IMG/VR virus record: IMGVR_UViG_3300042308_001511
Span: 186,001-250,000 of that record
Direction: 5' to 3' (one strand)
DNA: 64,000 nucleotides
The position numbers and the translations under genes were made by a program. Shown here one piece after another: positions 28,314-47,807 of this stretch. Under the pieces are notes generated by a model. It searched no databases, was not told where the DNA came from, and worked only from the letters and a program-made list of their open reading frames with translations. Every line of letters begins with the position of its first letter. Position 1 is the stretch's first letter.

Positions 28314-28325
28314 AAAATATGTAAA

Positions 28326-29009: not shown

Positions 29010-29025
29010 AAATAAAAAATAGAAT

Positions 29026-29697: not shown

Positions 29698-29698
29698 T

Positions 29699-31170: not shown

Positions 31171-31227
31171 ACAAAACATTCTTTATTTATAGAACGAATA
31201 CTAATTTCTAAAAAAATAAAAAAAAAT

Positions 31228-33008: not shown

Positions 33009-33015
33009 AATAGAA

Positions 33016-33969
33016 ATGATAATAACAACAACTTGTCCACTTAGGATATCTTTAGTAGGTGGATCAACCGATCATCCACATTACCTTGACAAATACGGTG
33101 TTGGTAGTGTTATAAGTTTTCCGTGTAATCTTAAGACCTATATAACTATACATAAAGACGTTTTTGGAATAAATTCTATTGGTAAAAGATTCATACTTAA
33201 CTACTCCGTTAGAGAAGAGGTTGATACTATTGAAGAGATAAAAAACGAACTTATTAAGAATTGTTTTGATAGATTGGACGTATCACACATAAATCTTTTC
33301 CTTACTTCCGATGTTTATTCAAGTGGTTCTGGTTTAGCTACCTCCTCTGCATATCTTATGGCATTGATAAAATCTATATATGTTATGAGAGATCAGAATA
33401 TAACAGAAAGTGAGATATGTAAAATTGCTATGAGTATAGAGAAAACTTTTAATCCTCTTGTTGGACAACAAGATTTTTATGGAAGTATGGGAGGTTTTAA
33501 AAGAATAAATTTTCACAAAAATGAATCTCCGAGTATAAAGTATCTGGATACTAAAATATTTGATGATATGGATATGTATTTGATATACACTGGTATCGCT
33601 CGAAACTCAACTGATATATTGAAGACTGTCAACATAGATAATAGTAAATATTTGATTGAGGAAGTGGAGAAATTAGAGAGTGCAATTAATACTTCTAATT
33701 TTAGTTTATTTCATGATACAATCAGAACTGCATGGGAGAAAAAGAAAAACATATCAACGGATATTTGTTCAAATAAATATTTGATAGAACTGGATAATAA
33801 AATAGAGAGTGATAAAAACATATTATCACATAAATTATTGGGCGCGGGAAATGGTGGATACTTCCTTATTTTCACAAAAAAAGAAAAAGAAATTGAAATA
33901 TCAAAAACTTATCCGAATTCCAAAAAAATAAGTATATCAGATAGAGGAATATCATATAATAAAATTTAG
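33016..33969 (+). CDS. GHMP-family sugar kinase (HddA-like heptose-7-phosphate kinase)
   Basis: PLRISLVGGSTD, GSGLATSSA, GQQDFY, LLGAGNGGY. Confidence 0.85.
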   Translation: MIITTTCPLRISLVGGSTDHPHYLDKYGVGSVISFPCNLKTYITIHKDVFGINSIGKRFILNYSVREEVDTIEEIKNELIKNCFDRLDVSHINLFLTSDVYSSGSGLATSSAYLMALIKSIYVMRDQNITESEICKIAMSIEKTFNPLVGQQDFYGSMGGFKRINFHKNESPSIKYLDTKIFDDMDMYLIYTGIARNSTDILKTVNIDNSKYLIEEVEKLESAINTSNFSLFHDTIRTAWEKKKNISTDICSNKYLIELDNKIESDKNILSHKLLGAGNGGYFLIFTKKEKEIEISKTYPNSKKISISDRGISYNKI

Positions 33970-33971
33970 GA

Positions 33972-34469
33972 ATGGACTTATTAGAATTACAGAGTTGTAT
34001 AAATAATATAGATTTAGTAAAAATTTCAGATTTGAATAGAATCGTATTATCACATAAATCAATATTAATTCTCGGAAATGGTGGTAGTAACTCAGTTGCT
34101 TCTCACATTTCACAGGACTATAGTAAGAAGCTTGGAATAAAATCACTCTCTTTCTCAGATCCATCACGACTGACATGTTACATAAATGACTATGGTATGG
34201 AATGGGCATATATAAAGTTCGTAGAGGATTTTTATGTAGATGAAACACTCGTTATTTTAATATCATCATCTGGAAATTCTAAAAATATAACGAATTTGGC
34301 AGATTATTGTGTAGCTAATTCTATAGACTTCATAACATTGTCGGGTTTTTCGAAAGAAAACAATCTTAACTCTTATTCGGACAAAGCGGTGTTGAGTTTT
34401 TGGGTGGATAGTTGTGATTATGGTGTCGTTGAAATAACACATGAGTCTATTTTACATTCAATTGTGTAA
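33972..34469 (+). CDS. SIS-domain phosphosugar isomerase (GmhA-like)
   Basis: GNGGSNSVASH, ISSSGNSKNI, N-L, YGVVE motifs. Confidence 0.85.
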   Translation: MDLLELQSCINNIDLVKISDLNRIVLSHKSILILGNGGSNSVASHISQDYSKKLGIKSLSFSDPSRLTCYINDYGMEWAYIKFVEDFYVDETLVILISSSGNSKNITNLADYCVANSIDFITLSGFSKENNLNSYSDKAVLSFWVDSCDYGVVEITHESILHSIV

Positions 34470-34490
34470 AAAAAAATAAAAATAAATAAA

Positions 34491-35114
34491 ATGAGAGTAA
34501 TAACAAATTATCCTGTTGCGATAGATTCACCAGATCACATTTTCCCATTTGGGACAGCAGAAAATAACACAACCGATTTAGGTTTTATTGATGAAATAGA
34601 AAATTATTTTGGAGGTAATAAAATAAAAACTTTAGATGTTGGCTGTGCTGGTGGACAATTAACAGTTGACTTTCATAATAGAGGACATTTGGCAATTGGG
34701 ATAGAGGGTAGTGATTATTCGGTAATCACCAGAAGAGCTAATTGGCCAAATTATTACGATAATATCTTATTCACATGTGATGCGACAAAACCTTACGAAA
34801 TTGTTGATGATAATGATAATAGAATTATTTTCGATTTGATAACATCGTGGGAGGTAGTAGAACACATACATAATGATGATTTATCTAATTTCTTTTCTAA
34901 TATGACTGAACATATGAATGAAAATTCCATTTTTTGTGCAAGTATTGCACCGGTACCCGATGTTCAACAGGGTCATATTTTACATCAGTCGGTTCATTCT
35001 AAGGAAGTATGGATGTCTGAAATATTACCAAAATACTTCTCTGATATTAAGGAACTTCCATTTAATAACAAAGTTAGATATGGTTCTAGCTTTCATGTAA
35101 TGTGTAAAAAATAG
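34491..35114 (+). CDS. Class I SAM-dependent methyltransferase
   Basis: LDVGCAGG, FDLITSWEVVEH. Confidence 0.85.
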   Translation: MRVITNYPVAIDSPDHIFPFGTAENNTTDLGFIDEIENYFGGNKIKTLDVGCAGGQLTVDFHNRGHLAIGIEGSDYSVITRRANWPNYYDNILFTCDATKPYEIVDDNDNRIIFDLITSWEVVEHIHNDDLSNFFSNMTEHMNENSIFCASIAPVPDVQQGHILHQSVHSKEVWMSEILPKYFSDIKELPFNNKVRYGSSFHVMCKK

Positions 35115-35135
35115 TACATAAATAAAATATTTTTT

Positions 35136-36044
35136 ATGAAAGTAATTGTTACGGGTGGTTGTGGTTTTATCGGTAGTCATATAGTCGATAAATTAGTTGA
35201 GATGTGTTATGATGTCATTGTAATTGATGATTTGTCTGCTTCTGAGAATGAGAAATTTTACTTCAATGATTCTGCCACTTATCATAAGTTAGATATATCA
35301 AACTTTGAAGATATAGAACCATTTTTTGAGGGTGTTGACTATGTTTTCCACCTTGCTGCGGAGTCACGTATACAACCTGCGATAAAAAACCCATCGAGAG
35401 CTTATAAAGTAAATGTAATAGGTACTCTAAATATATTGGAATCTTCGAAAAAACATAATATTAAAAGAGTTATTTATTCTTCTACTTCTTCGGTTTATGG
35501 TCTTAGTTGTGAATTACCTACCAAAGAGACTGAGAGTATAGATTGTCTAAATCCTTACTCTCACTCTAAATTCCAAGGAGAGGAACTATTTCGACAATAC
35601 TACAAAATGTACGGTCTCGATAGTGTAATATTCAGATATTTCAACGTATTTGGAGAGAGATCACCAGTTAAAGGACAATATGCACCTGTTGTTGGTATAT
35701 TTATTAATCAGATGAAACAAAGTAAACCGTTAACAATTGTCAGTGATGGATTAAGAAAAAGAGATTTTATTTACGTCGGTGATATAGTAGATGTAAATGT
35801 TTCTGGTATATTTTATGATGGTGTTATAGGTGCATCTACTTTCAATATAGGTTCTGGTGAGAATATTAGTATTTATGATATTGCCAGAATTATATCGGAT
35901 AATTGTATTCATCTGGAGGATAGACCTGGTGAGGCAGATAATACACTTGCTAACATATCTAAAGCTAAAGAAGTTTTAGGATTTAGTCCTAAAACTGATG
36001 TTACAAATTGGATAATAAATAATATTAATAATATTAATAAATGA
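35136..36044 (+). CDS. NAD-dependent epimerase/dehydratase (extended SDR)
   Basis: TGGCGFIGSH, HLAA, YSHSK (YxxxK), RYFNVFG, RDFIYV. Confidence 0.92.
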   Translation: MKVIVTGGCGFIGSHIVDKLVEMCYDVIVIDDLSASENEKFYFNDSATYHKLDISNFEDIEPFFEGVDYVFHLAAESRIQPAIKNPSRAYKVNVIGTLNILESSKKHNIKRVIYSSTSSVYGLSCELPTKETESIDCLNPYSHSKFQGEELFRQYYKMYGLDSVIFRYFNVFGERSPVKGQYAPVVGIFINQMKQSKPLTIVSDGLRKRDFIYVGDIVDVNVSGIFYDGVIGASTFNIGSGENISIYDIARIISDNCIHLEDRPGEADNTLANISKAKEVLGFSPKTDVTNWIINNINNINK

Positions 36045-37144
36045 AAGTTGCTATAATAACTGGTTCATCGGGTCTTATTGGTTCCCAGGCTTCTAATTTT
36101 TTACATAAAAAGGGATACAGAGTCATAGGTTTAGATAATGATATGAGATCCTATTTTTTTGGAAAATCTGCATCTACTATAAATTCCACTAAAGTTTTAA
36201 GTAGAGACTTAGAAAACTATTTACATTATTCTGTTGATATAAGAGATTACGTAGAGTTGGAGAAAATATTTAAAGAGTATTCTTCTGATATAGATATAGT
36301 TATACATACTGCAGCACAACCATCTCACGATTGGGCGGCCAAAGAACCTCTGACTGATTTCGGAATAAATGCGGTTGGTACTATGAATTTACTCGAGTTG
36401 ACGAGACTCTACTGTAAGGATGCGACATTTATATTCACATCGACAAACAAAGTATATGGAGATAGACCAAACTATCTGAATCTTATTGAGACTGATAGTA
36501 GGTTTGACATAGACCAGGATAGTTACAATTATGTAGAAAGAGACTATTTCTTCGACGGAATAGGATTGGATGGTAGTATAAATGAGTTTATGTCTATTGA
36601 TAATACTAAACACTCTGTATTTGGTGCATCAAAGGTTGCTGCGGATGTGATGTGTCAGGAATATGGAAAGTATTTCGATATGAATGTAGGAATTTTCAGA
36701 GGAGGATGTCTTACAGGTCCCAACCATGCGGGTGCTGAATTACATGGTTTTCTTTCCTATTTGGTTAAGTGTATTGTGAATGATTTACCATACACTATAC
36801 ATGGTTACAAAGGAAAACAGGTTAGAGACAATATACATTCATCTGACCTTGTAAATATGTTCTGGCAATTTCATCTGAAACCTAAGAAGGGTGAGGTTTA
36901 TAACGTAGGTGGTGGTAGACAAAACTCAACATCTATAATAGAGGCAATATCAACAATAAACAATATTGCGGAAACAAACTGGTCGAAATGGACACTGAGT
37001 GGTGAGAATCGTATTGGTGATCACATTTGGTATATAACTGACTTATCTAAGTTCAAAAAAGATTATCCTGATTGGGAAATTGAAATTGGATTGGAAGAAA
37101 CTATACGACAGATGGTCGAATTTGAAAAACAAAGTCGTGATTGA
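36041..37144 (+). CDS. NAD-dependent epimerase (CDP-paratose 2-epimerase-like)
   Basis: TGSSGLIG, AAQPSHD, STNKVYG, FGASK, GKQVRDNIH. Confidence 0.88.
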   Translation: MKVAIITGSSGLIGSQASNFLHKKGYRVIGLDNDMRSYFFGKSASTINSTKVLSRDLENYLHYSVDIRDYVELEKIFKEYSSDIDIVIHTAAQPSHDWAAKEPLTDFGINAVGTMNLLELTRLYCKDATFIFTSTNKVYGDRPNYLNLIETDSRFDIDQDSYNYVERDYFFDGIGLDGSINEFMSIDNTKHSVFGASKVAADVMCQEYGKYFDMNVGIFRGGCLTGPNHAGAELHGFLSYLVKCIVNDLPYTIHGYKGKQVRDNIHSSDLVNMFWQFHLKPKKGEVYNVGGGRQNSTSIIEAISTINNIAETNWSKWTLSGENRIGDHIWYITDLSKFKKDYPDWEIEIGLEETIRQMVEFEKQSRD

Positions 37145-37173
37145 ATTCATATAAAATAAAAAAAATATATTAA

Positions 37174-38352
37174 ATGGGAAAATTAGCACTAAACTTTATA
37201 TGTAAAGATGAGTCTCATGTAATCGAGACGATGCTTGAGAGTGCAAAAGGACTTGTAGACCTTATAGTCGTTAATGATACAGGATCTACGGATGGCACAC
37301 AACAAATAATTAAAAACTTCGGTGAGAAGTACAACATACCGACTTACGTATTTGAACGTCCATTTGATGACTTCGAAAAGAGTCGAAACCACGCTATGCA
37401 AATGTTGAGAGATGTGGTCAAAGATTTGGGTTGGGACGCATCTAAAGTCCATGGTTTTTGGTTTGATTGTGATGAGACGTTAGTTATTGATACTAAATTC
37501 AATAAAGACCAGTTCACAAAGGATCTTTATATGATCAACACATATATTGGTCAGATGAAGTATACCAGGAACACGTTCTTCAAAGTTTCTAAGCCTTTTA
37601 GATGGTATGGACCTGTGCATGAGTTCATTGTGTGTGACGAACAAAATATAACTTCTGGTCTGGCAGAAGGAATTAGTGTTGATGTTAAGATGACTGGTTC
37701 TTCTTGGCAGGGTGATATATCTAAGAAGTATCTTTCACATGCACACAAACTTGAGGCATATATTGCTGAAAATAGACAAGATCCTAGATGGATATTCTAC
37801 ACAGCACAATCTTTTCACGACTCAGCATCTATGAAAGATAATAAAGATGAGAACGATGAACGTCTTAGACGAGCAATACACTATTATCGTGAAAGGGTTA
37901 GTCGTAACGACGGATATCCAGAAGAACTTTACTACTCACAATACAGAATAGGAACTATTATGCGTATACTCGATGAGCCGTGGAATATGACACACCAGGA
38001 ACTTTTGAAGGCATATGCGATGGATCCACTTCGAGCAGAGTCTATCAAAGTTATAATAGACTACTACCTTCAGATGAATGAATGGCATATGGCATACCTT
38101 TATACAAAATTTGCCAAAACTAACTTTCATATGAAGAACCCATATCCATCACGTCTTCTTTTCGTTGATGAGGCAACTTATGTTTGGAAAATTGCCGAGG
38201 CACACTCTGCGGCGTGTTACTACACTAATAGAATGGAGGAAGCCAAATCTGCTTATATGGATATTCAACAGGCGATGAAGACACATCCACATTGTTTCAC
38301 ATCGGATGACATCGTCAAGATAAATATGAACGCACAATTTTTCAACAAATAG
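37174..38352 (+). CDS. GT2-like glycosyltransferase with TPR-like C-terminus
   Basis: ICKDESHVI, DTGSTDGT, F-RN-A, DCDE, GPVHE; helical repeat tail. Confidence 0.85.
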   Translation: MGKLALNFICKDESHVIETMLESAKGLVDLIVVNDTGSTDGTQQIIKNFGEKYNIPTYVFERPFDDFEKSRNHAMQMLRDVVKDLGWDASKVHGFWFDCDETLVIDTKFNKDQFTKDLYMINTYIGQMKYTRNTFFKVSKPFRWYGPVHEFIVCDEQNITSGLAEGISVDVKMTGSSWQGDISKKYLSHAHKLEAYIAENRQDPRWIFYTAQSFHDSASMKDNKDENDERLRRAIHYYRERVSRNDGYPEELYYSQYRIGTIMRILDEPWNMTHQELLKAYAMDPLRAESIKVIIDYYLQMNEWHMAYLYTKFAKTNFHMKNPYPSRLLFVDEATYVWKIAEAHSAACYYTNRMEEAKSAYMDIQQAMKTHPHCFTSDDIVKINMNAQFFNK

Positions 38353-38353
38353 T

Positions 38354-38830
38354 ATGATTACGGTTATAGCGGCAATGTCTAAAAATGGTGTCATTGGTAA
38401 AGAAAACAAACTTATATGGAATCTACCTAGTGATATGGTTTATTTTAAAGAGACTACTACGGGTGGAACTGTGGTGATGGGTCGTAAGACCTTTGAATCT
38501 ATAGGTAGGCCTTTACCTAACCGTAGAAATATAGTTGTTTCCCGTACAGGTTTTACACATAATGGTGTTGAGGTAGTAAGTTCTATCGAGAATGCTTTAG
38601 AGATATGTGACAAAGTATGTTTCGTTATTGGTGGTGGTGAATTATATAGACAGACTTTACCAATTGCGGACAAACTATTGTTGACTGTTGTTGATTGTGA
38701 AGTTGATGGTGATACGTATTTTCCTGATGTGTCAGAAGGTTGGATTAAGATTTCTGATAAGAAGGTTGATGCTGATTTGAAAAATGAATATTCACATACG
38801 TTTATTGAATATGAAAAATGTCGTTTTTAG
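38354..38830 (+). CDS. folA: Dihydrofolate reductase
   Basis: IAAMSKNGVIG, WNLPSDM, VMGRKTFESIGRPLPNRRNIV, IGGGELY, GDTYFP. Confidence 0.95.
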   Translation: MITVIAAMSKNGVIGKENKLIWNLPSDMVYFKETTTGGTVVMGRKTFESIGRPLPNRRNIVVSRTGFTHNGVEVVSSIENALEICDKVCFVIGGGELYRQTLPIADKLLLTVVDCEVDGDTYFPDVSEGWIKISDKKVDADLKNEYSHTFIEYEKCRF

Positions 38831-38874
38831 TAAACAACTTGATTTGAATTTATATAAAAAAAAACAAATATTTT

Positions 38875-39120
38875 ATGGCTACTAATAGTAAACACAGAAA
38901 AAACCACAAAGAGCGAGTTCAGGCACGCAAAAATAGACTTGCTAATGAAAAGATGGCAGCACAGAAAAAGCAGAGAGAGTTTATAATGAACTTAATCAAG
39001 CAAGAACAAGAAAGAGGTATGTTCGAAAACACCACTGCAATTGACGGACCAGTTATTGATGGACCAATTGTCGACGGACCGGTTATTGATGGACCAATTA
39101 TCGACGGACCAACGGTCTGA
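38875..39120 (+). CDS. Small basic protein with (I/V)DGP pentapeptide repeats
   Basis: Basic N-terminus, then IDGPV-IDGPI-VDGPV-IDGPI-IDGPT. Confidence 0.75.
   Translation: MATNSKHRKNHKERVQARKNRLANEKMAAQKKQREFIMNLIKQEQERGMFENTTAIDGPVIDGPIVDGPVIDGPIIDGPTV
39040..39114 (+). repeat. 15-nt tandem repeat x5 (30-nt higher-order period)
   Basis: ATTGACGGACCAGTT ATTGATGGACCAATT GTCGACGGACCGGTT ATTGATGGACCAATT ATCGACGGACCAACG. Confidence 0.85.
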
Positions 39121-39221
39121 TAATCGATTTGATTAGTTTGGTCCGTGCCTTTGGCCGGACCTTTCTTTTTTAATATGATAAACTTAGACATAAGTATAAC
39201 ATAAAAAAATAAACATTATAT

Positions 39222-40907
39222 ATGAAGAGAAAGATTAAATCTGCACTTATTTCAGTTTGGGATAAAGAGGGTCTTGATACGGTTGTGAGCAAATTGAATG
39301 AATTGGGAATTCAGATAATATCAACTGGAGGTACATACGAATACATAAAAAATCTGGACATACCAGTTTTATCGGTGGAAGAATTAACAGGTCAACCTGA
39401 AATTATGGGTGGTAGAGTTAAGACTTTACATCCTAAGATATTTGGTGGTATACTATATCAGAGGTCTTCTAAATCTGATAAAAAGGATCTTTCTACTAAC
39501 AATATGAAAGGTATAGACCTAGTTATTGTTGATTTATATCCTTTTGAACAAACAATCGCCAATATGGAGAATGAGGGATTGACTGATGATGATGCTATTG
39601 AGAAGATAGATATCGGTGGTGTTTCGCTTATAAGGGCAGCTGCAAAAAACCATAAAGATGTTTTGGTTATTGGTCATAAAGATCAATATAGCCTACTTAT
39701 GCAGGTTCTTGATAATGGTGGAAGTACTGAGTTTGAAGAGAGAAGAGAGTTTGCAATTGATGCATTCAACATAACTTCAAATTACGATGCTGATGTATTT
39801 AAATATCTTTTGGGTGATTCTGCGGAAGACCTTTCTGGCCTCACTGGTTACTTACCGACACAAGAAGATGGTCTTAGATTTTCGTCAGATGATAATAATC
39901 TAAATGACTTCCTTATTTGTTGGAAAAGGTTTGGATCTAGGCCTAACAGGATATTGATTGAGAATGCATATTCTTCAAAACTTGTTGGTGATGCAATTTC
40001 TGACATAATAAAGGAGAAGAATGTTTTCACTGAGGTTATACCTGATGGTGAAAGTCTGATAATAAATGATAGAGTTTTTGTTAGACTTGAGGATGAACTT
40101 TATTTATCTTATGTTGTAATTGATAGAAATAGTGAGAGTTCTTTCATAGATTCTATGCTCTTTTTGTACAAAGAAGGTTTTGATGGAGTACAAGACTACG
40201 TTGATTTGTTGAACGAGTGTCTTATAGACTTTCAAGAAGACACTGGTAATAAAATAAACGCGATGGTTTTGTCACCTTCTGGTCTTGAGATTGAGACTGT
40301 TGGAATAACTGATTATGATTCTGAGAATATAGAGACATACTATTCTGGTAAAACATTCAAAGCTATGGAAAAGGCAGTGAAGCGTATAAAAGGTTCGAAA
40401 AGAGGAATGACAATTCTTTATGGGCCTAGAGGTACTGGAAAAACAACCTCTATAAATTACATAGCAGATGGTCTTGATCGTATTGTCATATTCATTCCAA
40501 ACAATATGATAGAACATACTATAAATAATCCTGATTTTAGGAAATTTCTAAAGAGATTTGATCAACCTATAATAGTAATAGATGATTGTGAGTTGGCATT
40601 GAACGAGATATACAACAAATCTAACGTTACAACGACCAATCTTGTTCAGATGGTTGATGGTTTCTTGGCAGGTACTACTGATGTTAGTATTGTTGCGATA
40701 TTCAATACTGATAGTGAGGATGATATAGATCACAACCTTTTAGATTGTAATAGTTTGTTGGATGTTGTTGAGTTTACAGAACTTTCGACGGCTGAGTGTA
40801 ATGACCTTTCTAAAATTGTAGATGGTCGAAAGTATAAATCCTCTGCAAAAATGATTGACGTAGTTAAGAAAAGAAAGGGTGAGCAAAAAGAGAAAGTGGG
40901 GTTTTAA
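39222..40907 (+). CDS. PurH IMP-cyclohydrolase (MGS-like) domain fused to an AAA ATPase
   Basis: ALISVWDK, ISTGGT, GRVKTLHP, DLYPFE, IDIGGVSLIRAAAKN over ~195 aa; later GPRGTGKT and IIVIDDCE. No AICAR transformylase domain. Confidence 0.85.
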   Translation: MKRKIKSALISVWDKEGLDTVVSKLNELGIQIISTGGTYEYIKNLDIPVLSVEELTGQPEIMGGRVKTLHPKIFGGILYQRSSKSDKKDLSTNNMKGIDLVIVDLYPFEQTIANMENEGLTDDDAIEKIDIGGVSLIRAAAKNHKDVLVIGHKDQYSLLMQVLDNGGSTEFEERREFAIDAFNITSNYDADVFKYLLGDSAEDLSGLTGYLPTQEDGLRFSSDDNNLNDFLICWKRFGSRPNRILIENAYSSKLVGDAISDIIKEKNVFTEVIPDGESLIINDRVFVRLEDELYLSYVVIDRNSESSFIDSMLFLYKEGFDGVQDYVDLLNECLIDFQEDTGNKINAMVLSPSGLEIETVGITDYDSENIETYYSGKTFKAMEKAVKRIKGSKRGMTILYGPRGTGKTTSINYIADGLDRIVIFIPNNMIEHTINNPDFRKFLKRFDQPIIVIDDCELALNEIYNKSNVTTTNLVQMVDGFLAGTTDVSIVAIFNTDSEDDIDHNLLDCNSLLDVVEFTELSTAECNDLSKIVDGRKYKSSAKMIDVVKKRKGEQKEKVGF

Positions 40908-40928
40908 AAATAATAATATATACATACT

Positions 40929-41261
40929 ATGATATCTAAACTCAGTGATAATGATGCTTTGGACCTTCTTATGACATCTGAGTTCCAAGACGATATTTCG
41001 CCGAAAGAACTTAAGGAGATGCTTTTAAGATACCGGTATTTCTACAGGATTTTGCATGCAAAAATGGATAGGATCTCTCAGGATGGTGATTTTGAGAAGA
41101 GTAAGCTTATGGAGAGGTGTGATCTTCTCAACGGAATGATTATGGAGATGCAGATTAAGTGTGTCACAAAAGACGATAAAATTGAGAGGCTTAGAAAAAG
41201 AAAGCTGACATTTAAAGAAAGAATTTTAGGAAAAATAATAGAAGAAGATGAAGATAAGTGA
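40929..41261 (+). CDS. Coiled-coil hypothetical protein
   Basis: 110-aa helical ORF. Confidence 0.7.
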   Translation: MISKLSDNDALDLLMTSEFQDDISPKELKEMLLRYRYFYRILHAKMDRISQDGDFEKSKLMERCDLLNGMIMEMQIKCVTKDDKIERLRKRKLTFKERILGKIIEEDEDK

Positions 41262-42372
41262 CTTTGATAAACTCGAGAAGAAGCTGAATGGACAGAACTT
41301 CCACGAAAGCTATGGTAACATAAATAAGGTTATGACTGGATTGTCCTATTTTGGACATATCGCGTCTATATTTCTTGCATTTTTTATGCTTAAAAAGATA
41401 CTTTTGGGTGTTATGGATAACGAGATTATTGTTTATATCGTTACGGTCATAATACTTTCGGCTATTGAGTTATTGAAACGAGATATATTCCATAAATTTT
41501 CTGTTCTTTATTTGAAACTACGTTCCTTCACTAAGGACGTTTTACCACTTTTTTTCCTTAGTATTACAATAATTGGTATATCATTTTACTCATCTATAAA
41601 AGGTGCCAGTGAGTATTCGGACCTAGCTGATAAAATTGAACAAACAAAAATTGATAATAATAAAAGTTATGAGGATAGTTTGACTAAATCTTTCACTGCT
41701 AAAGAAATAAAACCTTTTGAAATTGAGATAAAAGAAGAAAAGGAATTATTCAAATCTAAAGATGAGAAGTTGGATATATTGAAATCAAAAACTAAACTTT
41801 CAAAAGATGAAAGAGTAACTAGGGATGATTTAAAATTAGAAAAAAAAGAGTCAGATGATAGAATATCTGTCTTAGAACAGAAAATAAACGAAAAAAAGGA
41901 ATCACTTAAATCTTTAATTCAAAAACATCACTTAGAATCAGAGAAAGAAACTAAAAAGAAGAAAAATGACAATTCTTCGAACTCTATAGCATTCATATTA
42001 TTCTCTACGTTGATAGAGATAAGTATACTCGCTGGGGTATATTTCAACGACTATTATGATGTAAGATCGTATAGAGAAAAAAGAAGTCAGTTAGAAAAAG
42101 ATCCAGGATTCCAGAAGTGGAAACTTTACAATCAGATGTTAGAGGTTATATACACAGAAGAAACTAAGATTAACCAGAAACTTCCGTCCAATAAAGGAAT
42201 AATTGATATGTGTAAGTTAAACGACATAATAGTTTTACCGAAAGATGTTACTGAGTTCCTAAAGATTATGGCTTCTATGGGTATAATCAAAGTATCTGGT
42301 AGTACTCGATACATAAACAAATTGAGGGATCAGTCCTTTGAAACATTAAGTAACCACTTTAATATAGTCTAA
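41248..42372 (+). CDS. Multi-pass membrane protein with long coiled coil
   Basis: Three N-terminal hydrophobic segments, K/E coiled coil, a further TM segment. Confidence 0.75.
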   Translation: MKISDFDKLEKKLNGQNFHESYGNINKVMTGLSYFGHIASIFLAFFMLKKILLGVMDNEIIVYIVTVIILSAIELLKRDIFHKFSVLYLKLRSFTKDVLPLFFLSITIIGISFYSSIKGASEYSDLADKIEQTKIDNNKSYEDSLTKSFTAKEIKPFEIEIKEEKELFKSKDEKLDILKSKTKLSKDERVTRDDLKLEKKESDDRISVLEQKINEKKESLKSLIQKHHLESEKETKKKKNDNSSNSIAFILFSTLIEISILAGVYFNDYYDVRSYREKRSQLEKDPGFQKWKLYNQMLEVIYTEETKINQKLPSNKGIIDMCKLNDIIVLPKDVTEFLKIMASMGIIKVSGSTRYINKLRDQSFETLSNHFNIV

Positions 42373-42374: not shown

Positions 42375-42650
42375 ATGAAACCGGATATTGGATCCGTTTA
42401 TGTGTGTGTTAATAGTGACACAAATGGGCGATTAGGTCCAAAGGGTCTTAAAGTTGGTGAATTATTTTTAATAAATCGTGTCATTGAGATGTACGATGTA
42501 GATAATTACGATGATGGATATAGATATGCTATCTTTATAAATAATATAGATTCTAAATCTGAATCTATATTCTACATAAAAGATTTTTTAAGGTGTTTCG
42601 TATCTATAGAGGATTGGAGAGAATCTCGATTAAAAGGATTAGAATTGTAG
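42375..42650 (+). CDS. Small hypothetical protein with tag variant (WRESRLKGLEL)
   Basis: 91-aa ORF; isolated copy of the tag. Confidence 0.7.
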   Translation: MKPDIGSVYVCVNSDTNGRLGPKGLKVGELFLINRVIEMYDVDNYDDGYRYAIFINNIDSKSESIFYIKDFLRCFVSIEDWRESRLKGLEL

Positions 42651-45600
42651 GTCGAAATATAGGTCTTTATTATCGGACATAAAATCTTTCAACTCTGCAT
42701 AATCTGTTATAACTTTCTTCTCACCATTTTCTAATGTAACTTCATATACAAATAAATTTTTTGCATCTTGTATTGCAAGTGGATTCGTACTGGTTACTTC
42801 AGTTACATCACCTTCATCAGATTCATCGGATTCTAAACTTCCATCGGATACTCTATTTTTCTCGGCGGCAGACTTTTCTTTACATAATTTTATGTGTGGT
42901 GCTGGTATAATTACCTCTATACCGAGTAGTGCCCAGACGAAATCTATAAATGCATTTATCAATTTCTCGATAAGACACAATGGTGGTTTTAGAAAGTCGA
43001 ATGGTAATAGTGGATTCATTCTTATGTCGTAGGATGAGTATGTCGGAAGACTTGGTAAGAAAGCTATACTTATTAATTTATTTATATCGGCCAATGGAAA
43101 ATTATCTGGAAGTGCAAATTTTCCACAATGTGGTTTTATATTTTTCAATAAATTACTCTTATTGATTGGGAATCCACCATTCATTTTTATTTCTGGTGGT
43201 TTAATATCAATCTTTATATCAGACTTTTTCAAATTTATGTCTGGTGTCTTCAAATCTACTTTCGGAATATCTATTTTAACTTTGTCTCCTACTAAATCGG
43301 CTGCAACCGAACCAGTAACTGTTATTAGGTCTCCTACTTTAGGCATAGTTACATTGGGTAGTTTTATTTCTGGTTTTGGTATCTTAATATCCAACCCACC
43401 GGTAGGTATACCACCTACACATGGTAAGTTTAAGTTTGGCATACTTGACAATGTTGCCCACTCTTTGGCTATACTTGGATCGAACTTTATACCAAATGCA
43501 CCGAGTAATCCTTCTGGTGAGAAGAACTTCATTATCCATTTGAATGATAGGAACTCTATTATTTTTGATGGTAAAGTCATCGGATTGGTTAGACTCTTAA
43601 AGAAGTCGAGTATCCACTCTACTATACAAGTAATTATTTTTAGTGGAGATGAAACCATACCTAATACAAACTTCAGAACTGGTTGTGAATTCATCAACCT
43701 TTTCTGTATAATGTCCATTATCTGTTTTAGTTTGTTTCTAAGTGCCTCATTATCAGGATCCTTTTTTAACTCGTTCTCTACTTTTTCTTTGGCCAACATT
43801 ACATCCTCATCTGAAACATCTTTCTTTTCAGGTATTATTTTAGAGTCTGGTGCTATTAGTGTAGATGTTGAACCTGGATTTATTAGTTCATCAACTTCTT
43901 TCAGAGCTACTGCTTGATCTTCCGTTATGTAAGTGTATGTGTAATCCGTACCCTTTACAAATTGACCAGTGGAATACCATATAGTAGAAACTTGATAAGT
44001 ATTACTATTTGTTGTCTTTTTTGTAGGTTGGGTTTCGACCTTTGAACCATTTGTAAGTTCTTTTAAGTAGTCATCGTTAGAAAGTCCTTTTTCTTTGGTT
44101 TCTACATCTGTCTTACCGCAACCTTTGAATTTTGCTTTACCAATTTTACCTTTTATTAGTCTAAATGGTGAACTTACTTTGGGTAGTGTTATGTTCGGTA
44201 TTCCTATATTTGGTATTGCAATATTGGGTAAATCTGGCATCTTTGGTAGTGATTTTGGTAATCCGTTAACTGATGCGTTTATACCACCATTTTTGTCTAA
44301 ACTCACATTCGCAGATAACTTAACATCTGGTATATTAATCTTCGAAATATCTACCTTAGGTATATCTACTTTTGGTAGGTCTGGAACTTTCACTTCGGGT
44401 ATTTTTGGTATAAGATTTGACATTTTAAATTCAACACCGAATGGTATACTCTTTCCGAATATCTCGAATGGAACCATAGCTACACCATCAAATAAGAATT
44501 TAAATTCTCCTGGGTTTTTGATGTTGAACCTATCTACATAAACGTGGTTTACTAATGGTGATGTGTTGAAATTTCTCTTCACCTTCGAAACATATTCTGA
44601 GTTACCCATATCTTTTTTTAGGGTATCAACTTTTTTGTCAATTATCTCTTTTGTACTTTTGAATTTTTCGAATGCTTTTTCGCTAAGTATTGAGAACGCT
44701 TCTCCTAATTTTTCTTTTACAATGTCGATTATGAAACTTACCGGATCTTTAACCAATTTCAAAAACTTTGATATGTTCGGGAATAGTTTTGTACCTAATT
44801 CTATTAGAAACTTCAAGAATGGTATGAATGCACCTATTGCATGTGGTAGTCTGTACCATTTACTTCCATTGTCACCACTTGCATCGGCGTCTTTCTTCTC
44901 ACCGATAAGAAACCCTTCGATAACGTAATATGATTCTGTATCCAAATCCGTTTTTGAGAACCTCTTCAAAATTTCTAAATCCATAGGATCGTCAGGGGTT
45001 CCGTTTCCGTATCTTCCTTTAGATAGTAAATCTTCTGTAGAAAGTGCACTATTATCAATCGAATCTGGGTATATAACTACACCATTCTCGGAGTTACTAC
45101 TTGTGACTTTCAGAGAGTATAATGGTATTGTTTTTTCACTAGATTTGATTGTTTCTGTGTTCATATTCACAGTTAATGTCTTAGATACACCGAAGTCTGG
45201 TAGATTGTCAACACCTAATACTTTTGTAAATTTCTTTTCTAACGAACTTATTTTTATTTCGTATTTATTTGTGGAGTTTACGGAACCATTCTCAAAGTTC
45301 CAGTTCTCTATACTGTATTCCGTAACACCTTTTACATTTGCTATAGTTGATCCGTTCTTAGTAACCTCTATGTCAAATTTTTCTTTATTATTCAAATTTA
45401 TTACGACGATGTTCTTTACAAATGACTTTATGTTAGAAGACAATATTGGAGTACCCTTTGCATCAATATAGTTTACTAATGTTGATGGGTCTATTCGCAT
45501 TATCTTCAAATCGTAGTCGGACTCAGGATCAACCCAAATCATTCCGTCTCCTTCTAAATCGGGATCCGATTTTGCGTCAGGGTTATGAACTTTGAATGGC

Positions 45601-47807
45601 ATAAAAGACCTTTTCATTGCCGCCGGAATTCCGGGTTTTTTGTAAACACTATTCTTACAAGAACCATAAAGAAAAACATTTTGTAAGTGAGATTGAACGT
45701 CTAACTTCGACATTATATCGGATAGTAAATCCGATTTTTCTTTATCGGTTAGGTCTTTTTTATTTTTTGTTTTTGATTTTATGTATTCGGTAAAGTATTT
45801 CAAGAACTCGGTGGTGTCTGTTCCTTCAAACCTTGTGATTATTGGATCTCCCTCTAATGCATCTATATCTGTGTTTATTATGTTTTTATCACCCTTTTTG
45901 TATCTCTTTATGGAATAGTTATCACCAGGTTTTGTCTTACTCTGTGTTGTTATACCAAATGGACCTTCCCATACATATATTGGGTCACCAAGCGTAGGCC
46001 ATATATAATCATTACCACTGAACCTCCATTTACTGGATTTGTATATCCAATCTGCAACTTCGAATGGTGTGGTTGTACTTTGTGATAGTACACCATTTGT
46101 TGATATAGTCTTCAGTTTTTCCCTTGGGTTAAGTGGTGATCCATCTGATTTGAATATACCTAATATTATTTTCTTTGGTTTATATTTATCATACGGACTA
46201 ACAGGTTCCTCGTCTTCTTGTAAAGGCTCTGTTGGTGATTCACCTTCTGTGGGAAGGTAGATGTATTCGTATTTATACTCTACGGTAGGATCAAAATTAC
46301 CGGTTGAATACCTAACACTATTTATATTCCAATTGGCAACTAAATCACTCAATTTGGATGTTACATCAAGTACTTTTTTACGTTTTGGTGAAACTGTGGC
46401 ATTACCTTCTTTATCTACATCTATTCCTAACCCTTCTTTTGAAATCTTCTGTAATTCTGATAATGCTTTTTTGAATTCTAATCCTCCCTTAAATCCTATA
46501 GCTTTGGTTCCATTTGAGTTTCCGTCTTTAACCATTGGTTTTTCTGATTTAGAGGTTAGTGGATTTGTGGCGAGTATTGGCATTACCCTGGCTATTACAT
46601 CTTCTATTGAAACTATCGAATTTAGTATAGATTTCACTATCTCAACATATGGTTTTTGTGTTTCGAATATAGATTGTAATATAGTCTTCTCTACTGACTT
46701 TAGTCCCAAATCTTCAAATACGTAAGGTATCTTAACTTCTGGAAGTGGTATTCTAATCTTTCCAGATGCGTCTCTATATTTTCCTATGTCTGGCAACTCC
46801 ATATTGAACGCTTCACCCATCTTCTTTATTATCTTCTCATCAAATTTTTCAAATTTGGATAAATCAGGAGTTGGTATCTTCGTTAGTCGGTCAGCATTTA
46901 GATTGATATCAGACTTCAGTTTATTTGCTTTTGCTGCCAGTTCGTCTGCCTTAGTGGTTGTTTTACCTAAAAGGTTTCCTGCACTTCCTGCCAGTTCGTT
47001 TGCCTTTCCTGTCAGATTGTTCGCCATTCCGGTTGTTTTACCTAAAAGGTTTCCTGCACTTCCCGCCAGTTCGTTTGTTTTGTTTAAAAGATTTCCAGCA
47101 CTATCAACACCAGTATCCTTTAACGTATTTGCCTTACCTAATAAATCATTTGCGGTGCTTTTAGTTTTGTCAACTAATTTACCTGCAAGTCCTGTAGTTG
47201 GTACATTTTTTGGTACTTCACCGTTTAGTATTTGATTAGTTGTTTTTTGTTTATCTGATAAGTTATTACTTAATTGACTGGTGGCATTTCCAAGTTGATT
47301 TGTGGCATTACTTATTTGTCCAGTAATTTGTCCGGTAATTTGTCCGGCCGCTGCACCGATTTGTCCAGTAGCATTACTTATTTGACCTGTAATTTGTCCG
47401 GTAGCATTAGTGATTTGTCCAGTAGCATTACTTATTTGTCCAGTAATTTGTCCAGTGGTATCAGTGATTTGGTTTGTCAAACCATTCAGTTGGTCAGTTG
47501 GTATTTTTGGTGGTTTTGGTATCTCTATTGGTGGAACCTTTGGTATTGGTGGAATTGGTGGCACTGTTGGTAAAAGTGTTGCCAATGAATTTATTTGACT
47601 TTGTATGAAAGATTTAACAAACTTATCAGAGATTCCAACATCACCCTTTATGAATTTTGTTAGGAAGTCAGTGTTTGGGACAAGTAGAAGAGTCTCTGCA
47701 TCTACACCAATTGATTTGGAAATCTTACTCTTTATACCTGGAAGAGCAAGTGATACGTGAGAGGGTCCTTGTAAAATACTTTCTCTGTATAATGGCCAAA
47801 ATGACAT
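42639..47807 (-). CDS. Giant (1722 aa) probable virion/tail-associated protein with low-complexity repeats
   Basis: TGQI repeats, duplicated AGSAGNLLGKTT, Pro-rich (P/K)xI repeats, hydrophobic helices; TATATA box upstream. Confidence 0.8.
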   Translation of the reverse strand: MSFWPLYRESILQGPSHVSLALPGIKSKISKSIGVDAETLLLVPNTDFLTKFIKGDVGISDKFVKSFIQSQINSLATLLPTVPPIPPIPKVPPIEIPKPPKIPTDQLNGLTNQITDTTGQITGQISNATGQITNATGQITGQISNATGQIGAAAGQITGQITGQISNATNQLGNATSQLSNNLSDKQKTTNQILNGEVPKNVPTTGLAGKLVDKTKSTANDLLGKANTLKDTGVDSAGNLLNKTNELAGSAGNLLGKTTGMANNLTGKANELAGSAGNLLGKTTTKADELAAKANKLKSDINLNADRLTKIPTPDLSKFEKFDEKIIKKMGEAFNMELPDIGKYRDASGKIRIPLPEVKIPYVFEDLGLKSVEKTILQSIFETQKPYVEIVKSILNSIVSIEDVIARVMPILATNPLTSKSEKPMVKDGNSNGTKAIGFKGGLEFKKALSELQKISKEGLGIDVDKEGNATVSPKRKKVLDVTSKLSDLVANWNINSVRYSTGNFDPTVEYKYEYIYLPTEGESPTEPLQEDEEPVSPYDKYKPKKIILGIFKSDGSPLNPREKLKTISTNGVLSQSTTTPFEVADWIYKSSKWRFSGNDYIWPTLGDPIYVWEGPFGITTQSKTKPGDNYSIKRYKKGDKNIINTDIDALEGDPIITRFEGTDTTEFLKYFTEYIKSKTKNKKDLTDKEKSDLLSDIMSKLDVQSHLQNVFLYGSCKNSVYKKPGIPAAMKRSFMPFKVHNPDAKSDPDLEGDGMIWVDPESDYDLKIMRIDPSTLVNYIDAKGTPILSSNIKSFVKNIVVINLNNKEKFDIEVTKNGSTIANVKGVTEYSIENWNFENGSVNSTNKYEIKISSLEKKFTKVLGVDNLPDFGVSKTLTVNMNTETIKSSEKTIPLYSLKVTSSNSENGVVIYPDSIDNSALSTEDLLSKGRYGNGTPDDPMDLEILKRFSKTDLDTESYYVIEGFLIGEKKDADASGDNGSKWYRLPHAIGAFIPFLKFLIELGTKLFPNISKFLKLVKDPVSFIIDIVKEKLGEAFSILSEKAFEKFKSTKEIIDKKVDTLKKDMGNSEYVSKVKRNFNTSPLVNHVYVDRFNIKNPGEFKFLFDGVAMVPFEIFGKSIPFGVEFKMSNLIPKIPEVKVPDLPKVDIPKVDISKINIPDVKLSANVSLDKNGGINASVNGLPKSLPKMPDLPNIAIPNIGIPNITLPKVSSPFRLIKGKIGKAKFKGCGKTDVETKEKGLSNDDYLKELTNGSKVETQPTKKTTNSNTYQVSTIWYSTGQFVKGTDYTYTYITEDQAVALKEVDELINPGSTSTLIAPDSKIIPEKKDVSDEDVMLAKEKVENELKKDPDNEALRNKLKQIMDIIQKRLMNSQPVLKFVLGMVSSPLKIITCIVEWILDFFKSLTNPMTLPSKIIEFLSFKWIMKFFSPEGLLGAFGIKFDPSIAKEWATLSSMPNLNLPCVGGIPTGGLDIKIPKPEIKLPNVTMPKVGDLITVTGSVAADLVGDKVKIDIPKVDLKTPDINLKKSDIKIDIKPPEIKMNGGFPINKSNLLKNIKPHCGKFALPDNFPLADINKLISIAFLPSLPTYSSYDIRMNPLLPFDFLKPPLCLIEKLINAFIDFVWALLGIEVIIPAPHIKLCKEKSAAEKNRVSDGSLESDESDEGDVTEVTSTNPLAIQDAKNLFVYEVTLENGEKKVITDYAELKDFMSDNKDLYFDLQF

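What the first reader, a model, noticed from the sequence alone, without database searches (positions are those of the whole stretch)
39222..40907. PurH cyclohydrolase domain fused to an AAA ATPase instead of AICAR transformylase
Seen: one uninterrupted 561-aa ORF with a complete PurH N-terminal MGS-like/IMP cyclohydrolase domain, a linker, then Walker A GPRGTGKT and Walker B IIVIDDCE. Known: PurH normally pairs this domain with AICAR transformylase. Inference: the domain may have been repurposed as a purine-nucleotide (IMP/ZMP-like) sensor regulating an ATPase, or this is a recent chance fusion of two genes.
Basis: partly seen in the sequence, partly recalled or inferred. Interest (0 to 1): 0.6.

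Follow-up and report, generated by a model that had tools for sequence, protein, structure and literature searches.

The report
Phage IMP cyclohydrolase–BCS1-like ATPase fusion
One lineage of giant freshwater phages has permanently joined an intact, host-type purine enzyme domain (IMP cyclohydrolase) to a phage BCS1-like ring ATPase, which is a real, conserved and apparently undescribed architecture whose benefit is still unknown.

Summary
Window 39222-40907 (+) is one 561-aa ORF with four parts:
- a complete PurH-type IMP cyclohydrolase (IMPCH) domain, aa 1-200;
- a disordered, hypervariable linker, aa 201-221;
- an AAA core, aa 376-540.

The last two parts together resemble Bcs1 and YjoB. 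The window lies in a 344-kb freshwater jumbo phage.

It is not an artefact or a recent accident. More than 120 protein clusters (54-98 % identity) from independent assemblies keep the fusion. Contigs from independent studies cross the junction without indels. Natural variants are almost all synonymous.

In a tree of the ATPase part, the fused forms are one clade (support 100) inside a large family of free-standing ~350-aa phage ATPases. That points to a single fusion event. The family was already described as jumbo-phage BCS1 orthologues.

The IMPCH half is at least as conserved as the ATPase half. Its active-site residues are all in place, and 69 of 72 positions conserved in both match cellular PurH. 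The phage has no AICAR transformylase but does encode FolD, DHFR and ThyA.

The most likely reading is a working enzyme flexibly tethered to an assembly chaperone ring. A purine-sensing role is not excluded. This is a new variant of known kinds, of moderate interest.

The parts
39140..39171 (+). Terminator-like bulged hairpin plus U-tract, lying between the upstream 81-aa ORF and the fusion gene. It suggests the fusion gene is not simply co-transcribed with DHFR.
   Evidence: RNA fold -15.7 kcal/mol, z -4.6, 0 of 200 shuffles as good. The simple consensus scan missed it because of the bulge.
39222..40907 (+). Whole fusion gene, 561 aa (P0001).
39222..39821 (+). IMP cyclohydrolase domain (aa 1-200): MGS-like fold plus the first part of AICARFT_IMPCHas. 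Pocket residues K15, S34-T38, R65, K67, T68, Y106, D130 and K142 are invariant or nearly so across 120 homologues.
   Evidence: pLDDT 80-94
39822..39884 (+). Linker (aa 201-221). It is hypervariable, tolerates indels and is predicted to be disordered.
   Evidence: Mean column entropy 2.03 against 0.77-0.87 in the domains. pLDDT 34-38.
39885..40346 (+). Beta-rich middle domain (aa 222-375), homologous to the N-terminal part of the free-standing ~350-aa phage ATPases. In whole-length Foldseek alignments it occupies the position of the Bcs1 middle domain and the YjoB NTD.
   Evidence: (YjoB aligned over model residues 23-354)
40347..40841 (+). AAA core plus lid (aa 376-540). Walker A is at 40422-40445 and Walker B 'DDCE' lies within 40569-40592. 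The sensor-1 Asn495 is invariant. There is no Arg at the expected arginine-finger positions.
40842..40904 (+). Variable basic tail ending in Gly-Phe, invariant in 120/120 homologues and preceded by a hydrophobic residue (Ile in 110 of 120, Val here).
40929..41261 (+). 110-aa coiled-coil-like protein that always directly follows the ATPase, in fused and free-standing relatives down to about 30 % identity.
   Evidence: weak DUF465 hit
41248..42372 (+). 374-aa protein with about 4 hydrophobic (TM-like) segments, conserved downstream in the megaphage relatives.
42639..47807 (-). Giant 1722-aa repeat-rich protein. In relatives its homologue lies directly upstream of the ATPase on the same strand. 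Here it is inverted and lies downstream.
   Evidence: (weak tape-measure hit)

Best explanation
This is a genuine, anciently fixed gene fusion in one clade of freshwater jumbo/megaphages.

How it arose (shown). The 5' half of a cellular purH, the IMP cyclohydrolase domain, was captured. Its nearest cellular relatives are the N-terminal halves of ordinary bifunctional PurH. It was joined through a floppy ~20-aa linker to the N-terminus of a phage BCS1/YjoB-like AAA+ ATPase. That ATPase is a core gene of a conserved module: giant protein, ~75-aa protein, ATPase, ~110-aa partner, membrane protein.

How it works (inferred). Most likely each half keeps its ancestral job.
- The IMPCH domain cyclises FAICAR to IMP as an auxiliary metabolic activity. 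This irreversible step would pull the host AICAR transformylase reaction forward. That reaction is fed with 10-formyl-THF, which the phage's own FolD helps to supply.
- The ATPase assembles into a ring (6- or 7-mer) that acts as a chamber-type chaperone or translocase for folded phage proteins during virion assembly.
- The fusion mainly secures co-expression and displays several enzyme copies on the ring. Tight allosteric coupling is not required.

Status of the steps.
- Shown: the fusion is real, it has a single origin, both halves are under purifying selection, the pocket is canonical, and the ATPase has a BCS1-like fold.
- Inferred: catalytic activity, ring formation, the assembly role and the lack of coupling.
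For: Reality and conservation.
- More than 120 clusters at 54-98 % identity cover 100 % of the query at 554-568 aa with the same Pfam set, on contigs up to 687 kb.
- Independent contigs cross the junction without indels.
- 21 of the 24 natural substitutions listed in the ORF are synonymous.

Single origin.
- Of the top 150 representatives of the ATPase half at 50 % clustering, only one is fused. The other full-length entries are ~330-430 aa and free-standing; shorter entries are fragments.
- In the tree the fused forms are one clade, SH-aLRT 100, nested among free forms.
- The unfused megaphages LR745206 and LR756502 share the same downstream synteny and have no IMPCH anywhere.

The enzyme half looks intact.
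- It is as conserved as the ATPase half or more so: entropy 0.77 against 0.80-0.87, and 60-81 % against 47-67 % identity to P0001 for non-near-identical members of the same sequence set.
- All pocket residues are invariant or nearly so. They match the active-site list in PMC9525906.
- 69 of 72 positions conserved in both fused and cellular PurH N-domains are identical.
- The two apparent oddities are not fusion-specific. Asp104 is shared by all 120 nearest IMPCH/PurH sequences, including 54 confirmed bifunctional PurH N-terminal parts. An aromatic at position 13 is known from active fungal and mycobacterial PurH (PMC9525906).
- Each PurH half works in isolation, and stand-alone PurH2 exists (PMC3261824; cyanophage P-SSM2 purH2).

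Metabolic context.
- FolD and DHFR lie in the window and ThyA elsewhere in the genome.
- Fused relatives carry a PurN-like gene.

ATPase half.
- The AF2 model has pLDDT 79.
- The Foldseek top 15 hits are all Bcs1 or YjoB over 324-403 aligned columns, E 1e-13 to 1e-10.
- VIA gives Z 12.9 to the Bcs1 AAA domain.
- The family profile hits only Bcs1 among PDB sequences.
- Iyer et al. 2021 describe BCS1 orthologues in jumbo phages and propose a membrane-proximal assembly role.

Flexible tether.
- The linker is hypervariable, has pLDDT 34-38, and the whole-chain pTM is 0.40. The ESM Atlas model has pTM 0.43.
Against: - No activity of either half has been measured.
- A fusion kept in every sampled member of the clade, with no reversion, hints at some functional advantage beyond co-expression.
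- Six positions are constrained only in the fused clade: Y39, K84, K88, I179, D180, N183. They could mark a new interface and therefore some coupling.
- The phage lacks AICAR transformylase, IMPDH, PurA and PurN, so the enzyme would depend entirely on host-made FAICAR.
- The AAA domain lacks arginines at the canonical finger positions and has DD rather than DE in Walker B. It may therefore be a slow or switch-like ATPase rather than a motor.
- The assembly role of phage BCS1-like proteins is a published proposal, not a tested fact.
- The statement that the AICARFT reaction is unfavourable and unchannelled rests on my recall of the ATIC kinetics literature, not on a paper read here.
Confidence: 0.5

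Rival explanations
1. Purine-nucleotide sensor. The IMPCH domain no longer works mainly as an enzyme. Instead it binds IMP, XMP, FAICAR or ZMP, and so gates ring assembly or ATPase activity of the BCS1-like unit. This would couple a late assembly or translocation step to the purine supply of the infected cell.
For: - The ligand pocket is strictly conserved.
- The domain sits at the N-terminus of the chamber-forming middle domain.
- The fusion has never reverted in the sampled clade.
- A handful of surface positions are constrained only in fused proteins.
- From general knowledge: the MGS-like fold also serves as the IMP/UMP-binding allosteric domain of carbamoyl-phosphate synthetase.
Against: - Residues needed for chemistry are kept as strictly as those needed for binding, and 69 of 72 jointly conserved positions equal cellular PurH. 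Nothing marks a loss of catalysis.
- The linker is hypervariable, tolerates indels and is predicted to be disordered, and no fixed inter-domain arrangement is predicted.
- Free-standing family members, which are the great majority, work without any such domain.
Confidence: 0.25
2. Non-enzymatic structural use. The IMPCH domain serves as an oligomerisation, adaptor or client-like module on the ring. For example, it could take the topological place of the Bcs1 membrane anchor, or recruit a host purine enzyme.
For: - In Bcs1 the segment N-terminal to the middle domain is the membrane anchor. Here that position is taken by IMPCH, and the protein has no TM segment.
- Constrained surface positions lie in two helices.
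Against: - Strict conservation of the buried catalytic pocket is not expected for a mere scaffold.
- Free-standing relatives in the same gene module have no N-terminal extension at all.
Confidence: 0.1
3. Altered chemistry. The domain cyclises or hydrolyses a non-canonical purine precursor, as ForH does in formycin biosynthesis. This could serve a modified nucleotide.
For: - The stand-alone IMPCH homologue ForH is among the PDB matches, E 6e-25.
- The phage is rich in sugar and methyl-transfer genes.
Against: - The pocket is indistinguishable from that of the nearest cellular bifunctional PurH.
- The domain is far closer to PurH (E 1e-44) than to ForH.
Confidence: 0.07
4. Artefact or recent accident: an assembly chimera, a sequencing error that removed a stop, or a very recent neutral read-through of two adjacent genes.
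For: Free-standing versions of both parts exist in other phages.
Against: - Independent contigs from several studies cross the junction with no indels.
- More than 120 clusters down to 54 % identity are fused.
- The fused forms are one clade with support 100.
- Both halves are under purifying selection.
Confidence: 0.01

Closest known systems
Bifunctional PurH / ATIC (AICAR transformylase / IMP cyclohydrolase)
   Same: - The N-terminal ~200 aa are a complete IMPCH domain, about 40-45 % identical to solved PurH structures and 50-58 % to the nearest cellular PurH.
- It has the same motifs and pocket residues.
   Different: - The C-terminal AICAR transformylase domain is absent from the protein and from the whole phage.
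- The NCBIfam PurH equivalog scores (239 and 218 bits) are far below their cut-offs (402 and 528) because only the first ~200 positions match.
- The C-terminal partner is an unrelated AAA+ unit.
Stand-alone IMP cyclohydrolases: cyanophage PurH2 (P-SSM2, phrog_30501), archaeal PurH2, ForH
   Same: An IMPCH domain without a covalently attached transformylase, carried by a phage as an auxiliary metabolic gene.
   Different: - Those are free proteins of ~196-216 aa. In P-SSM2 the gene sits next to a separate transformylase gene.
- Here the domain is fused to an ATPase, and no transformylase is encoded.
Jumbo-phage BCS1 orthologues (Iyer et al. 2021, PMC7824862), with mitochondrial Bcs1 and B. subtilis YjoB as structural references
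   Same: - Residues 222-561 are a member of a large family of ~350-aa phage ATPases.
- The model's best structural matches are Bcs1 and YjoB over its whole length. The family profile hits only Bcs1 in the PDB.
- Cultured relatives (PA5oct, XacN1, MIJ3) are annotated 'ATPase' or 'AAA+ ATPase and BCS1 domain protein'.
   Different: - There is no TM anchor and no Pfam BCS1_N hit.
- There are no arginines at the SRH finger positions, and Walker B reads DDCE.
- It carries an N-terminal metabolic enzyme domain, which that paper does not mention.

Membership tests
PurH-type IMP cyclohydrolase domain (PurH2/PurJ; MGS-like fold) | Pfam MGS plus the N-terminal part of AICARFT_IMPCHas, both above gathering score, covering the ~200-aa domain | tested here: met
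   MGS 67.3 bits (cut-off 24.1). AICARFT_IMPCHas 49.4 bits (cut-off 25), profile positions 1-65. Aligned over query 5-196 to solved PurH structures.
PurH-type IMP cyclohydrolase domain (PurH2/PurJ; MGS-like fold) | Active-site residues: Arg, Lys and Thr of GGRVKTLHP, Tyr of LYPF, Asp-Ile-Gly of IDIGG, Lys of AAKN, and the STGGT phosphate loop | tested here: met
   All are invariant or nearly so in 120 homologues. The residue list comes from PMC9525906. The Lys of AAKN (human Lys137) is from my recall of the ATIC literature.
PurH-type IMP cyclohydrolase domain (PurH2/PurJ; MGS-like fold) | FAICAR to IMP cyclohydrolase activity | not testable with these tools
   Needs an enzyme assay.
Bifunctional PurH (NCBIfam TIGR00355 / NF002049 equivalogs) | C-terminal AICAR transformylase domain, and a whole-protein score above the equivalog cut-off | tested here: not met
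   Scores of 239 and 218 bits against cut-offs of 402 and 528. Only profile positions 1-202 match. There is no further PF01808 match anywhere in the phage genome.
BCS1/YjoB-like AAA+ ATPases (including jumbo-phage BCS1 orthologues) | Single classical AAA core with Walker A, Walker B and a sensor-1 Asn, closest in structure to Bcs1 | tested here: met
   PF00004 30.6 bits (cut-off 21.2). The motifs are invariant. Foldseek's top 15 hits are Bcs1 or YjoB. VIA Z 12.9, rmsd 3.2 over 186 residues to the Bcs1 AAA domain, though statistically tied with other classical AAA proteins. The profile hits only Bcs1 in PDB sequences, E 1e-3.
BCS1/YjoB-like AAA+ ATPases (including jumbo-phage BCS1 orthologues) | Chamber-forming N-terminal/middle domain directly preceding the AAA core | tested here: inconclusive
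   - A beta-rich domain (aa 222-375) is present and well modelled.
- It is included in the whole-length Foldseek alignments to Bcs1 and YjoB and in the VIA alignment to YjoB, model residues 23-354.
- However, TM-scores are only 0.4-0.5, the domain was not searched on its own, and Pfam BCS1_N gives no hit.
BCS1/YjoB-like AAA+ ATPases (including jumbo-phage BCS1 orthologues) | N-terminal transmembrane anchor (mitochondrial Bcs1 only) | tested here: not met
   No hydrophobic segment in P0001. A separate conserved downstream protein has about 4 such segments.
BCS1/YjoB-like AAA+ ATPases (including jumbo-phage BCS1 orthologues) | Arginine finger(s) in the second region of homology | tested here: not met
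   - The segment after sensor 1 reads I-D-x-x-L-L-[ED]-C-N-[NS]-L in all 120 homologues, with no Arg or Lys.
- The profile alignment to Bcs1 ends just before this segment.
- The position of the Bcs1 arginines is from recall.
BCS1/YjoB-like AAA+ ATPases (including jumbo-phage BCS1 orthologues) | Hexameric or heptameric ring, and ATP-dependent handling of folded clients | not testable with these tools
   Needs SEC-MALS or cryo-EM, and biochemistry.
MGS-like allosteric nucleotide-sensor domains (such as the CPSase allosteric domain) | Binds the nucleotide without turning it over, and transmits the signal to an attached catalytic unit | not testable with these tools
   Only indirect evidence: a canonical catalytic pocket, a disordered linker and a low whole-chain pTM.

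The most novel reading that the evidence does not exclude
The IMPCH domains form a crown of purine-nucleotide sensors on a BCS1-like ring. Occupancy by IMP, XMP, FAICAR or ZMP would switch ring assembly or client translocation on or off. The phage would then time a late, membrane-proximal virion-assembly step to the purine status of the infected cell. That would be a metabolic checkpoint built from a former biosynthetic enzyme.
Probability: 0.2. Interest if true: 0.75.

Novelty: new variant of a known kind. Interest (0 to 1): 0.45.

Why it matters
Both building blocks are known: phage-borne IMP cyclohydrolase genes, and BCS1-like ATPases of jumbo phages. Neither has been studied biochemically in phages. 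I found no description of their covalent union in the searched literature; database entries call these proteins 'hypothetical'.

The fusion has been kept without reversal across a widespread clade of freshwater mega/jumbo phages, with genomes from 344 kb to over 600 kb.

It gives a handle on two open questions:
- What do the enigmatic phage BCS1-like ATPases do?
- Why do phages carry only the last, cyclohydrolase step of purine synthesis?

If the two halves talk to each other, this would be a rare case of a biosynthetic enzyme domain controlling a virion-assembly machine. If they do not, it is a tidy example of an auxiliary metabolic gene being carried along by a core phage gene.

Tried and rejected
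1. Docking test (complex prediction), IMPCH domain against middle+AAA unit, with matched family alignments. After five 'busy' errors it ran. Verdict: 'no answer', score 0.01 against a mark of 0.32, and the controls were not folded.

2. Search for a pre-fusion state with adjacent but separate IMPCH and ATPase genes. The closest 'stand-alone' IMPCH proteins on long contigs (P0128, P0150, P0152) turned out to be ordinary bacterial purH genes split by frameshifts, in purH-mreB-mreC-PBP2 synteny. No split intermediate was found.

3. The search for related loci in genome contigs with the N-domain. It gave only two distant MAG hits at 44 % identity and was uninformative about the donor.

4. I first took Asn-to-Asp104 and Ser-to-aromatic13 for fusion-specific pocket changes. 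I rejected this. All 120 nearest IMPCH/PurH sequences have the Asp, and the aromatic is known in active PurH.

5. PADLOC defence models: only sub-threshold P-loop noise.

6. PHROGs and NCBIfam for the ATPase half and its two downstream partners: nothing informative.

7. Annotated neighbourhoods of distant relatives in PA5oct and XacN1: the genes are called only 'ATPase', with no functional clue.

8. Literature searches for the fusion, or for purH in huge phages: nothing relevant.

9. Internal start for a separate ATPase. There is no ATG between residues 163 and 312. The only in-frame alternative start near the junction is a TTG at Leu197, which lies just before the variable linker. I did not pursue this.
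Full report
**1. What is there**

Window 39222-40907 (+) is a single uninterrupted 561-aa ORF, P0001.

Pfam places three families above their gathering scores:
- MGS at aa 20-134.
- The first 65 of the 311 positions of AICARFT_IMPCHas at aa 140-204.
- AAA (PF00004) at aa 398-508.

The first ~200 residues align end to end with solved PurH structures, E 1e-44 to 1e-37. They also match phrog_30501, a family of ~196-aa stand-alone phage IMP cyclohydrolases, E 2e-47.

The window is positions 186001-250000 of a 344,083-bp IMG/VR virus record, estimated to be 91 % complete. The DNA occurs in lake, river and other freshwater metagenomes from about 14 studies.

**2. Is it an artefact?**

No. The evidence:
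- Logan contigs from two independent studies (X2 record 12, 3.8 kb; X3 record 20, 17 kb) each span 38800-41300 in one piece, with 13 and 19 substitutions and no indels. A third study tiles the junction with overlapping contigs. A contig from a metatranscriptome library lies on 39822-40033.
- Of the 24 substitutions listed inside the ORF, 21 are synonymous when taken one at a time. Two of the 24 hit the same codon.

**3. Is the fusion shared?**

Yes.
- The word-index search returned more than 120 clusters at 54-98 % identity. All cover 100 % of the query at 554-568 aa with the same Pfam set, from JGI, ENA, NCBI and Logan assemblies. Some are recorded on contigs of 617-687 kb.
- A 172-kb IMG/VR contig (L004) and contigs of 537 kb and 107 kb (L025, L026) show the fused gene in the same gene order: giant protein, ~75-aa ORF, fused gene, ~110-aa ORF, ~380-aa membrane protein, and further on an Hc1-like gene.

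**4. What is the ancestral state?**

Free-standing.
- In the ~640-kb megaphages LR745206 and LR756502, the part equivalent to aa ~210-561 is a separate gene of 354-355 aa (48-50 % identity). It sits in the same synteny.
- Those two genomes have no IMPCH at all.
- The exhaustive search with aa 205-561 found 2,610 representatives (E <= 1e-3) at 50 % clustering. Among the best 150, only one (P0055, 562 aa) is fused. The remaining full-length entries are ~330-430 aa; shorter entries are fragments.
- A maximum-likelihood tree of 36 fused and 79 free ATPase parts puts all fused proteins in one clade. Support is SH-aLRT 100, and one change of state explains the distribution. The clade is nested among free forms and lies next to the two megaphages.
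- Caveats: the tree used the quick method, was midpoint-rooted for drawing only, and the fused rows carried ~17 linker residues.

So there was one fusion event, and no reversal in the sample.

**5. The enzyme half**

Conservation:
- Across 120 fused homologues, mean column entropy is 0.77 for aa 1-200, 0.87 for aa 222-375 and 0.80 for aa 376-540. It is 2.03 for the linker, aa 201-221.
- For the same 36 sequences (excluding the one near-identical relative at 93-94 %), identity to P0001 is 60-81 % in the N-domain and 47-67 % in the ATPase part.
- The phosphate loop (STGGT), GGRVKTLHP, LYPF, IDIGG and AAKN are all invariant or nearly so. These include the residues listed as the IMPCH active site in PMC9525906.

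Two features that looked unusual are not:
- Asp in 'VDLYPF', where the solved PurH structures aligned have Asn. The Asp is shared by all 120 nearest IMPCH/PurH sequences. These include 54 N-terminal parts of ordinary bifunctional PurH and entries named from Bacteroidales/Paludibacter.
- An aromatic in place of human Ser12. This occurs in active fungal and mycobacterial PurH.

Comparison with cellular PurH:
- Of 72 positions conserved in both fused and cellular N-domains, 69 are identical. The three that differ are E/S60, T/S185 and L/F196.
- E at position 60 also occurs in solved bacterial PurH.
- Six positions are constrained only in the fused clade: Y39, K84, K88, I179, D180 and N183. They may mark a new contact surface.

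Origin:
- The closest cellular relatives (about 55-58 %) are purH genes in purH-mreB-mreC-PBP2 synteny.
- The ESM Atlas structural neighbour is a PurH cluster labelled Bacteroidota.
- Together with the Bacteroidales/Paludibacter names, this suggests capture from a Bacteroidota-type host. No formal donor test was done.

**6. The ATPase half**

Structure:
- An AF2 model of aa 205-561 built on the family alignment has mean pLDDT 79. It shows a beta-rich domain followed by an AAA core and lid.
- Foldseek's first 15 PDB hits are all heptameric Bcs1 or B. subtilis YjoB, aligned over 324-403 columns (E 1e-13 to 1e-10). The next hits are proteasomal and p97-type AAA proteins.
- The Foldseek-independent VIA search gives Z 12.9 (rmsd 3.2, 186 residues) to the Bcs1 AAA domain. 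This is tied with other classical AAA proteins. YjoB aligns over model residues 23-354.
- The family profile hits only Bcs1 among all PDB sequences, E 1e-3.

Published background:
- Iyer et al. 2021 (PMC7824862) reported BCS1 orthologues in all three major jumbo-phage groups. They proposed that these bind and translocate folded proteins during membrane-proximal head assembly. That paper contains neither 'purH' nor 'cyclohydrolase'.
- YjoB is a hexameric chamber chaperone (PMC9565160).

Differences from Bcs1:
- No TM anchor.
- No Pfam BCS1_N hit.
- Walker B reads D-D-C-E and is invariant.
- No Arg or Lys in the segment after sensor 1, where classical AAA proteins carry their arginine fingers. 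The position of those fingers is from recall.
- The C-terminus ends in an invariant Gly-Phe preceded by a hydrophobic residue, mostly Ile.

Neighbours:
- The universally conserved neighbour is a ~103-112-aa protein directly downstream.
- In the megaphage subgroup, a ~375-aa protein with about 4 hydrophobic segments follows it.

**7. Are the halves coupled?**

- The full-length AF2 model has well-folded domains (pLDDT 80-94), a disordered linker (aa 201-223, pLDDT 34-38) and pTM 0.40.
- The ESM Atlas model has pTM 0.43.
- These results fit a flexible tether but do not exclude contacts in the oligomer.
- The dedicated docking job gave 'no answer' and is not used as evidence.

**8. Metabolic context**

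- The phage has no AICAR transformylase, IMPDH, PurA or PurN.
- It does encode FolD at 25175-26044, DHFR at 38354-38830 and ThyA elsewhere in the genome.
- FolD makes 10-formyl-THF, the cofactor of AICAR transformylase.
- Two fused relatives carry a PurN-like formyltransferase.
- FolD also occurs in one unfused megaphage, so it is not specific to the fusion.
- Each PurH half is catalytically competent on its own, and free PurH2 exists in archaea (PMC3261824) and in cyanophage P-SSM2, where it sits beside a separate transformylase gene.
- A hairpin with a U-tract at 39140-39171 (-15.7 kcal/mol, z -4.6) separates the fusion gene from the DHFR-81-aa unit upstream.
- In relatives the gene sits in the giant-protein/ATPase module, not among metabolic genes.

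**9. Verdict**

- The fusion is real, has a single origin, is widespread in one clade of freshwater mega/jumbo phages, and is selected in both halves.
- The most likely mechanism (about 0.5) is an active IMP cyclohydrolase flexibly tethered to a BCS1/YjoB-like assembly chaperone ring, with each half doing its ancestral job.
- The recent-accident and artefact idea is refuted.
- Both components are known kinds. Their union appears undescribed, so I rate it a new variant of a known kind, with moderate interest.

Noticed in passing
window 25175-26044 (+); 38354-38830 (+); G000:C1:87311-88096 (-): The phage encodes a full FolD (methylene-THF dehydrogenase / methenyl-THF cyclohydrolase), a DHFR and a ThyA. 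This is a one-carbon/folate toolkit alongside the lone IMPCH domain.
   Followed up: partly
window 26106-38352 (+): A ~12-kb run of sugar and glycan genes in a phage. It includes nucleotide-sugar transferase, a GT47/exostosin-like gene, GT25, a GT10 fucosyltransferase with FucT_N, two FkbM methyltransferases, GT1/GT4, a GHMP kinase, a SIS-like gene, a SAM methyltransferase, two NAD epimerase/dehydratases and a GT2.
   Followed up: no
window 13526-15223 (-), within the GC bump at 10-18 kb: A class I Glu/Gln-type aminoacyl-tRNA synthetase (catalytic domain plus both anticodon-binding domains, E 3e-101). It lies in a stretch of higher GC (0.39-0.45 against 0.30-0.36 in most other bins). No tRNA genes are present in the window.
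   Followed up: no
window 8789-9808 (+): C-5 cytosine DNA methylase, E 4e-61. Relatives carry a Dam-like (MethyltransfD12) gene downstream of the ATPase module.
   Followed up: no
window 38875-39120 (+), repeats at 39040-39112: An 81-aa ORF whose C-terminus is a tandem array of a 5-aa [VI]DGP[VI]-type unit (15-nt period, ~5 copies). It is followed by the terminator-like hairpin at 39140-39171.
   Followed up: partly
window 42639-47807 (-): A giant 1722-aa protein with degenerate TGQI-type repeats near its N-terminus, two C-terminal hydrophobic segments and a weak tape-measure hit. In relatives its homologue is directly upstream of the ATPase on the same strand. Here it is inverted, so there has been a local rearrangement.
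   Followed up: partly
L010 (MT835698.1, 'Bacteriophage sp.', human faecal sample): This phage-database record looks like a bacterial fragment, flanked by ClpB, MreB and a probable MreC-type ORF. It carries a 197-aa IMPCH-only gene with just 178 nt before mreB. That makes it an apparently genuine transformylase-less IMPCH in a cellular genome. NCBI also names a 220-aa 'IMP cyclohydrolase [Bacteroidales bacterium]'.
   Followed up: partly
L015, L017, L018, L025, L026: A ~71-aa Hc1 (chlamydial histone H1-like, PF07432) gene recurs a few genes downstream of the ATPase, in both fused and free-standing relatives.
   Followed up: no
L020 (Xanthomonas phage XacN1): The distant BCS1-like 'ATPase' (ORF406) lies three genes upstream of a GMP reductase (ORF403). 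This is another purine-interconversion gene near this ATPase family, and may be coincidence.
   Followed up: no
P0001 aa 559-561 (window 40896-40904): The extreme C-terminus is an invariant Gly-Phe (120/120) preceded by a hydrophobic residue (Ile in 110 of 120, Val here), after a variable basic tail. It is reminiscent of C-terminal docking motifs of other ring ATPases. It is also present in the free-standing megaphage homologue LR745206; LR756502 ends in Gly-Leu.
   Followed up: no
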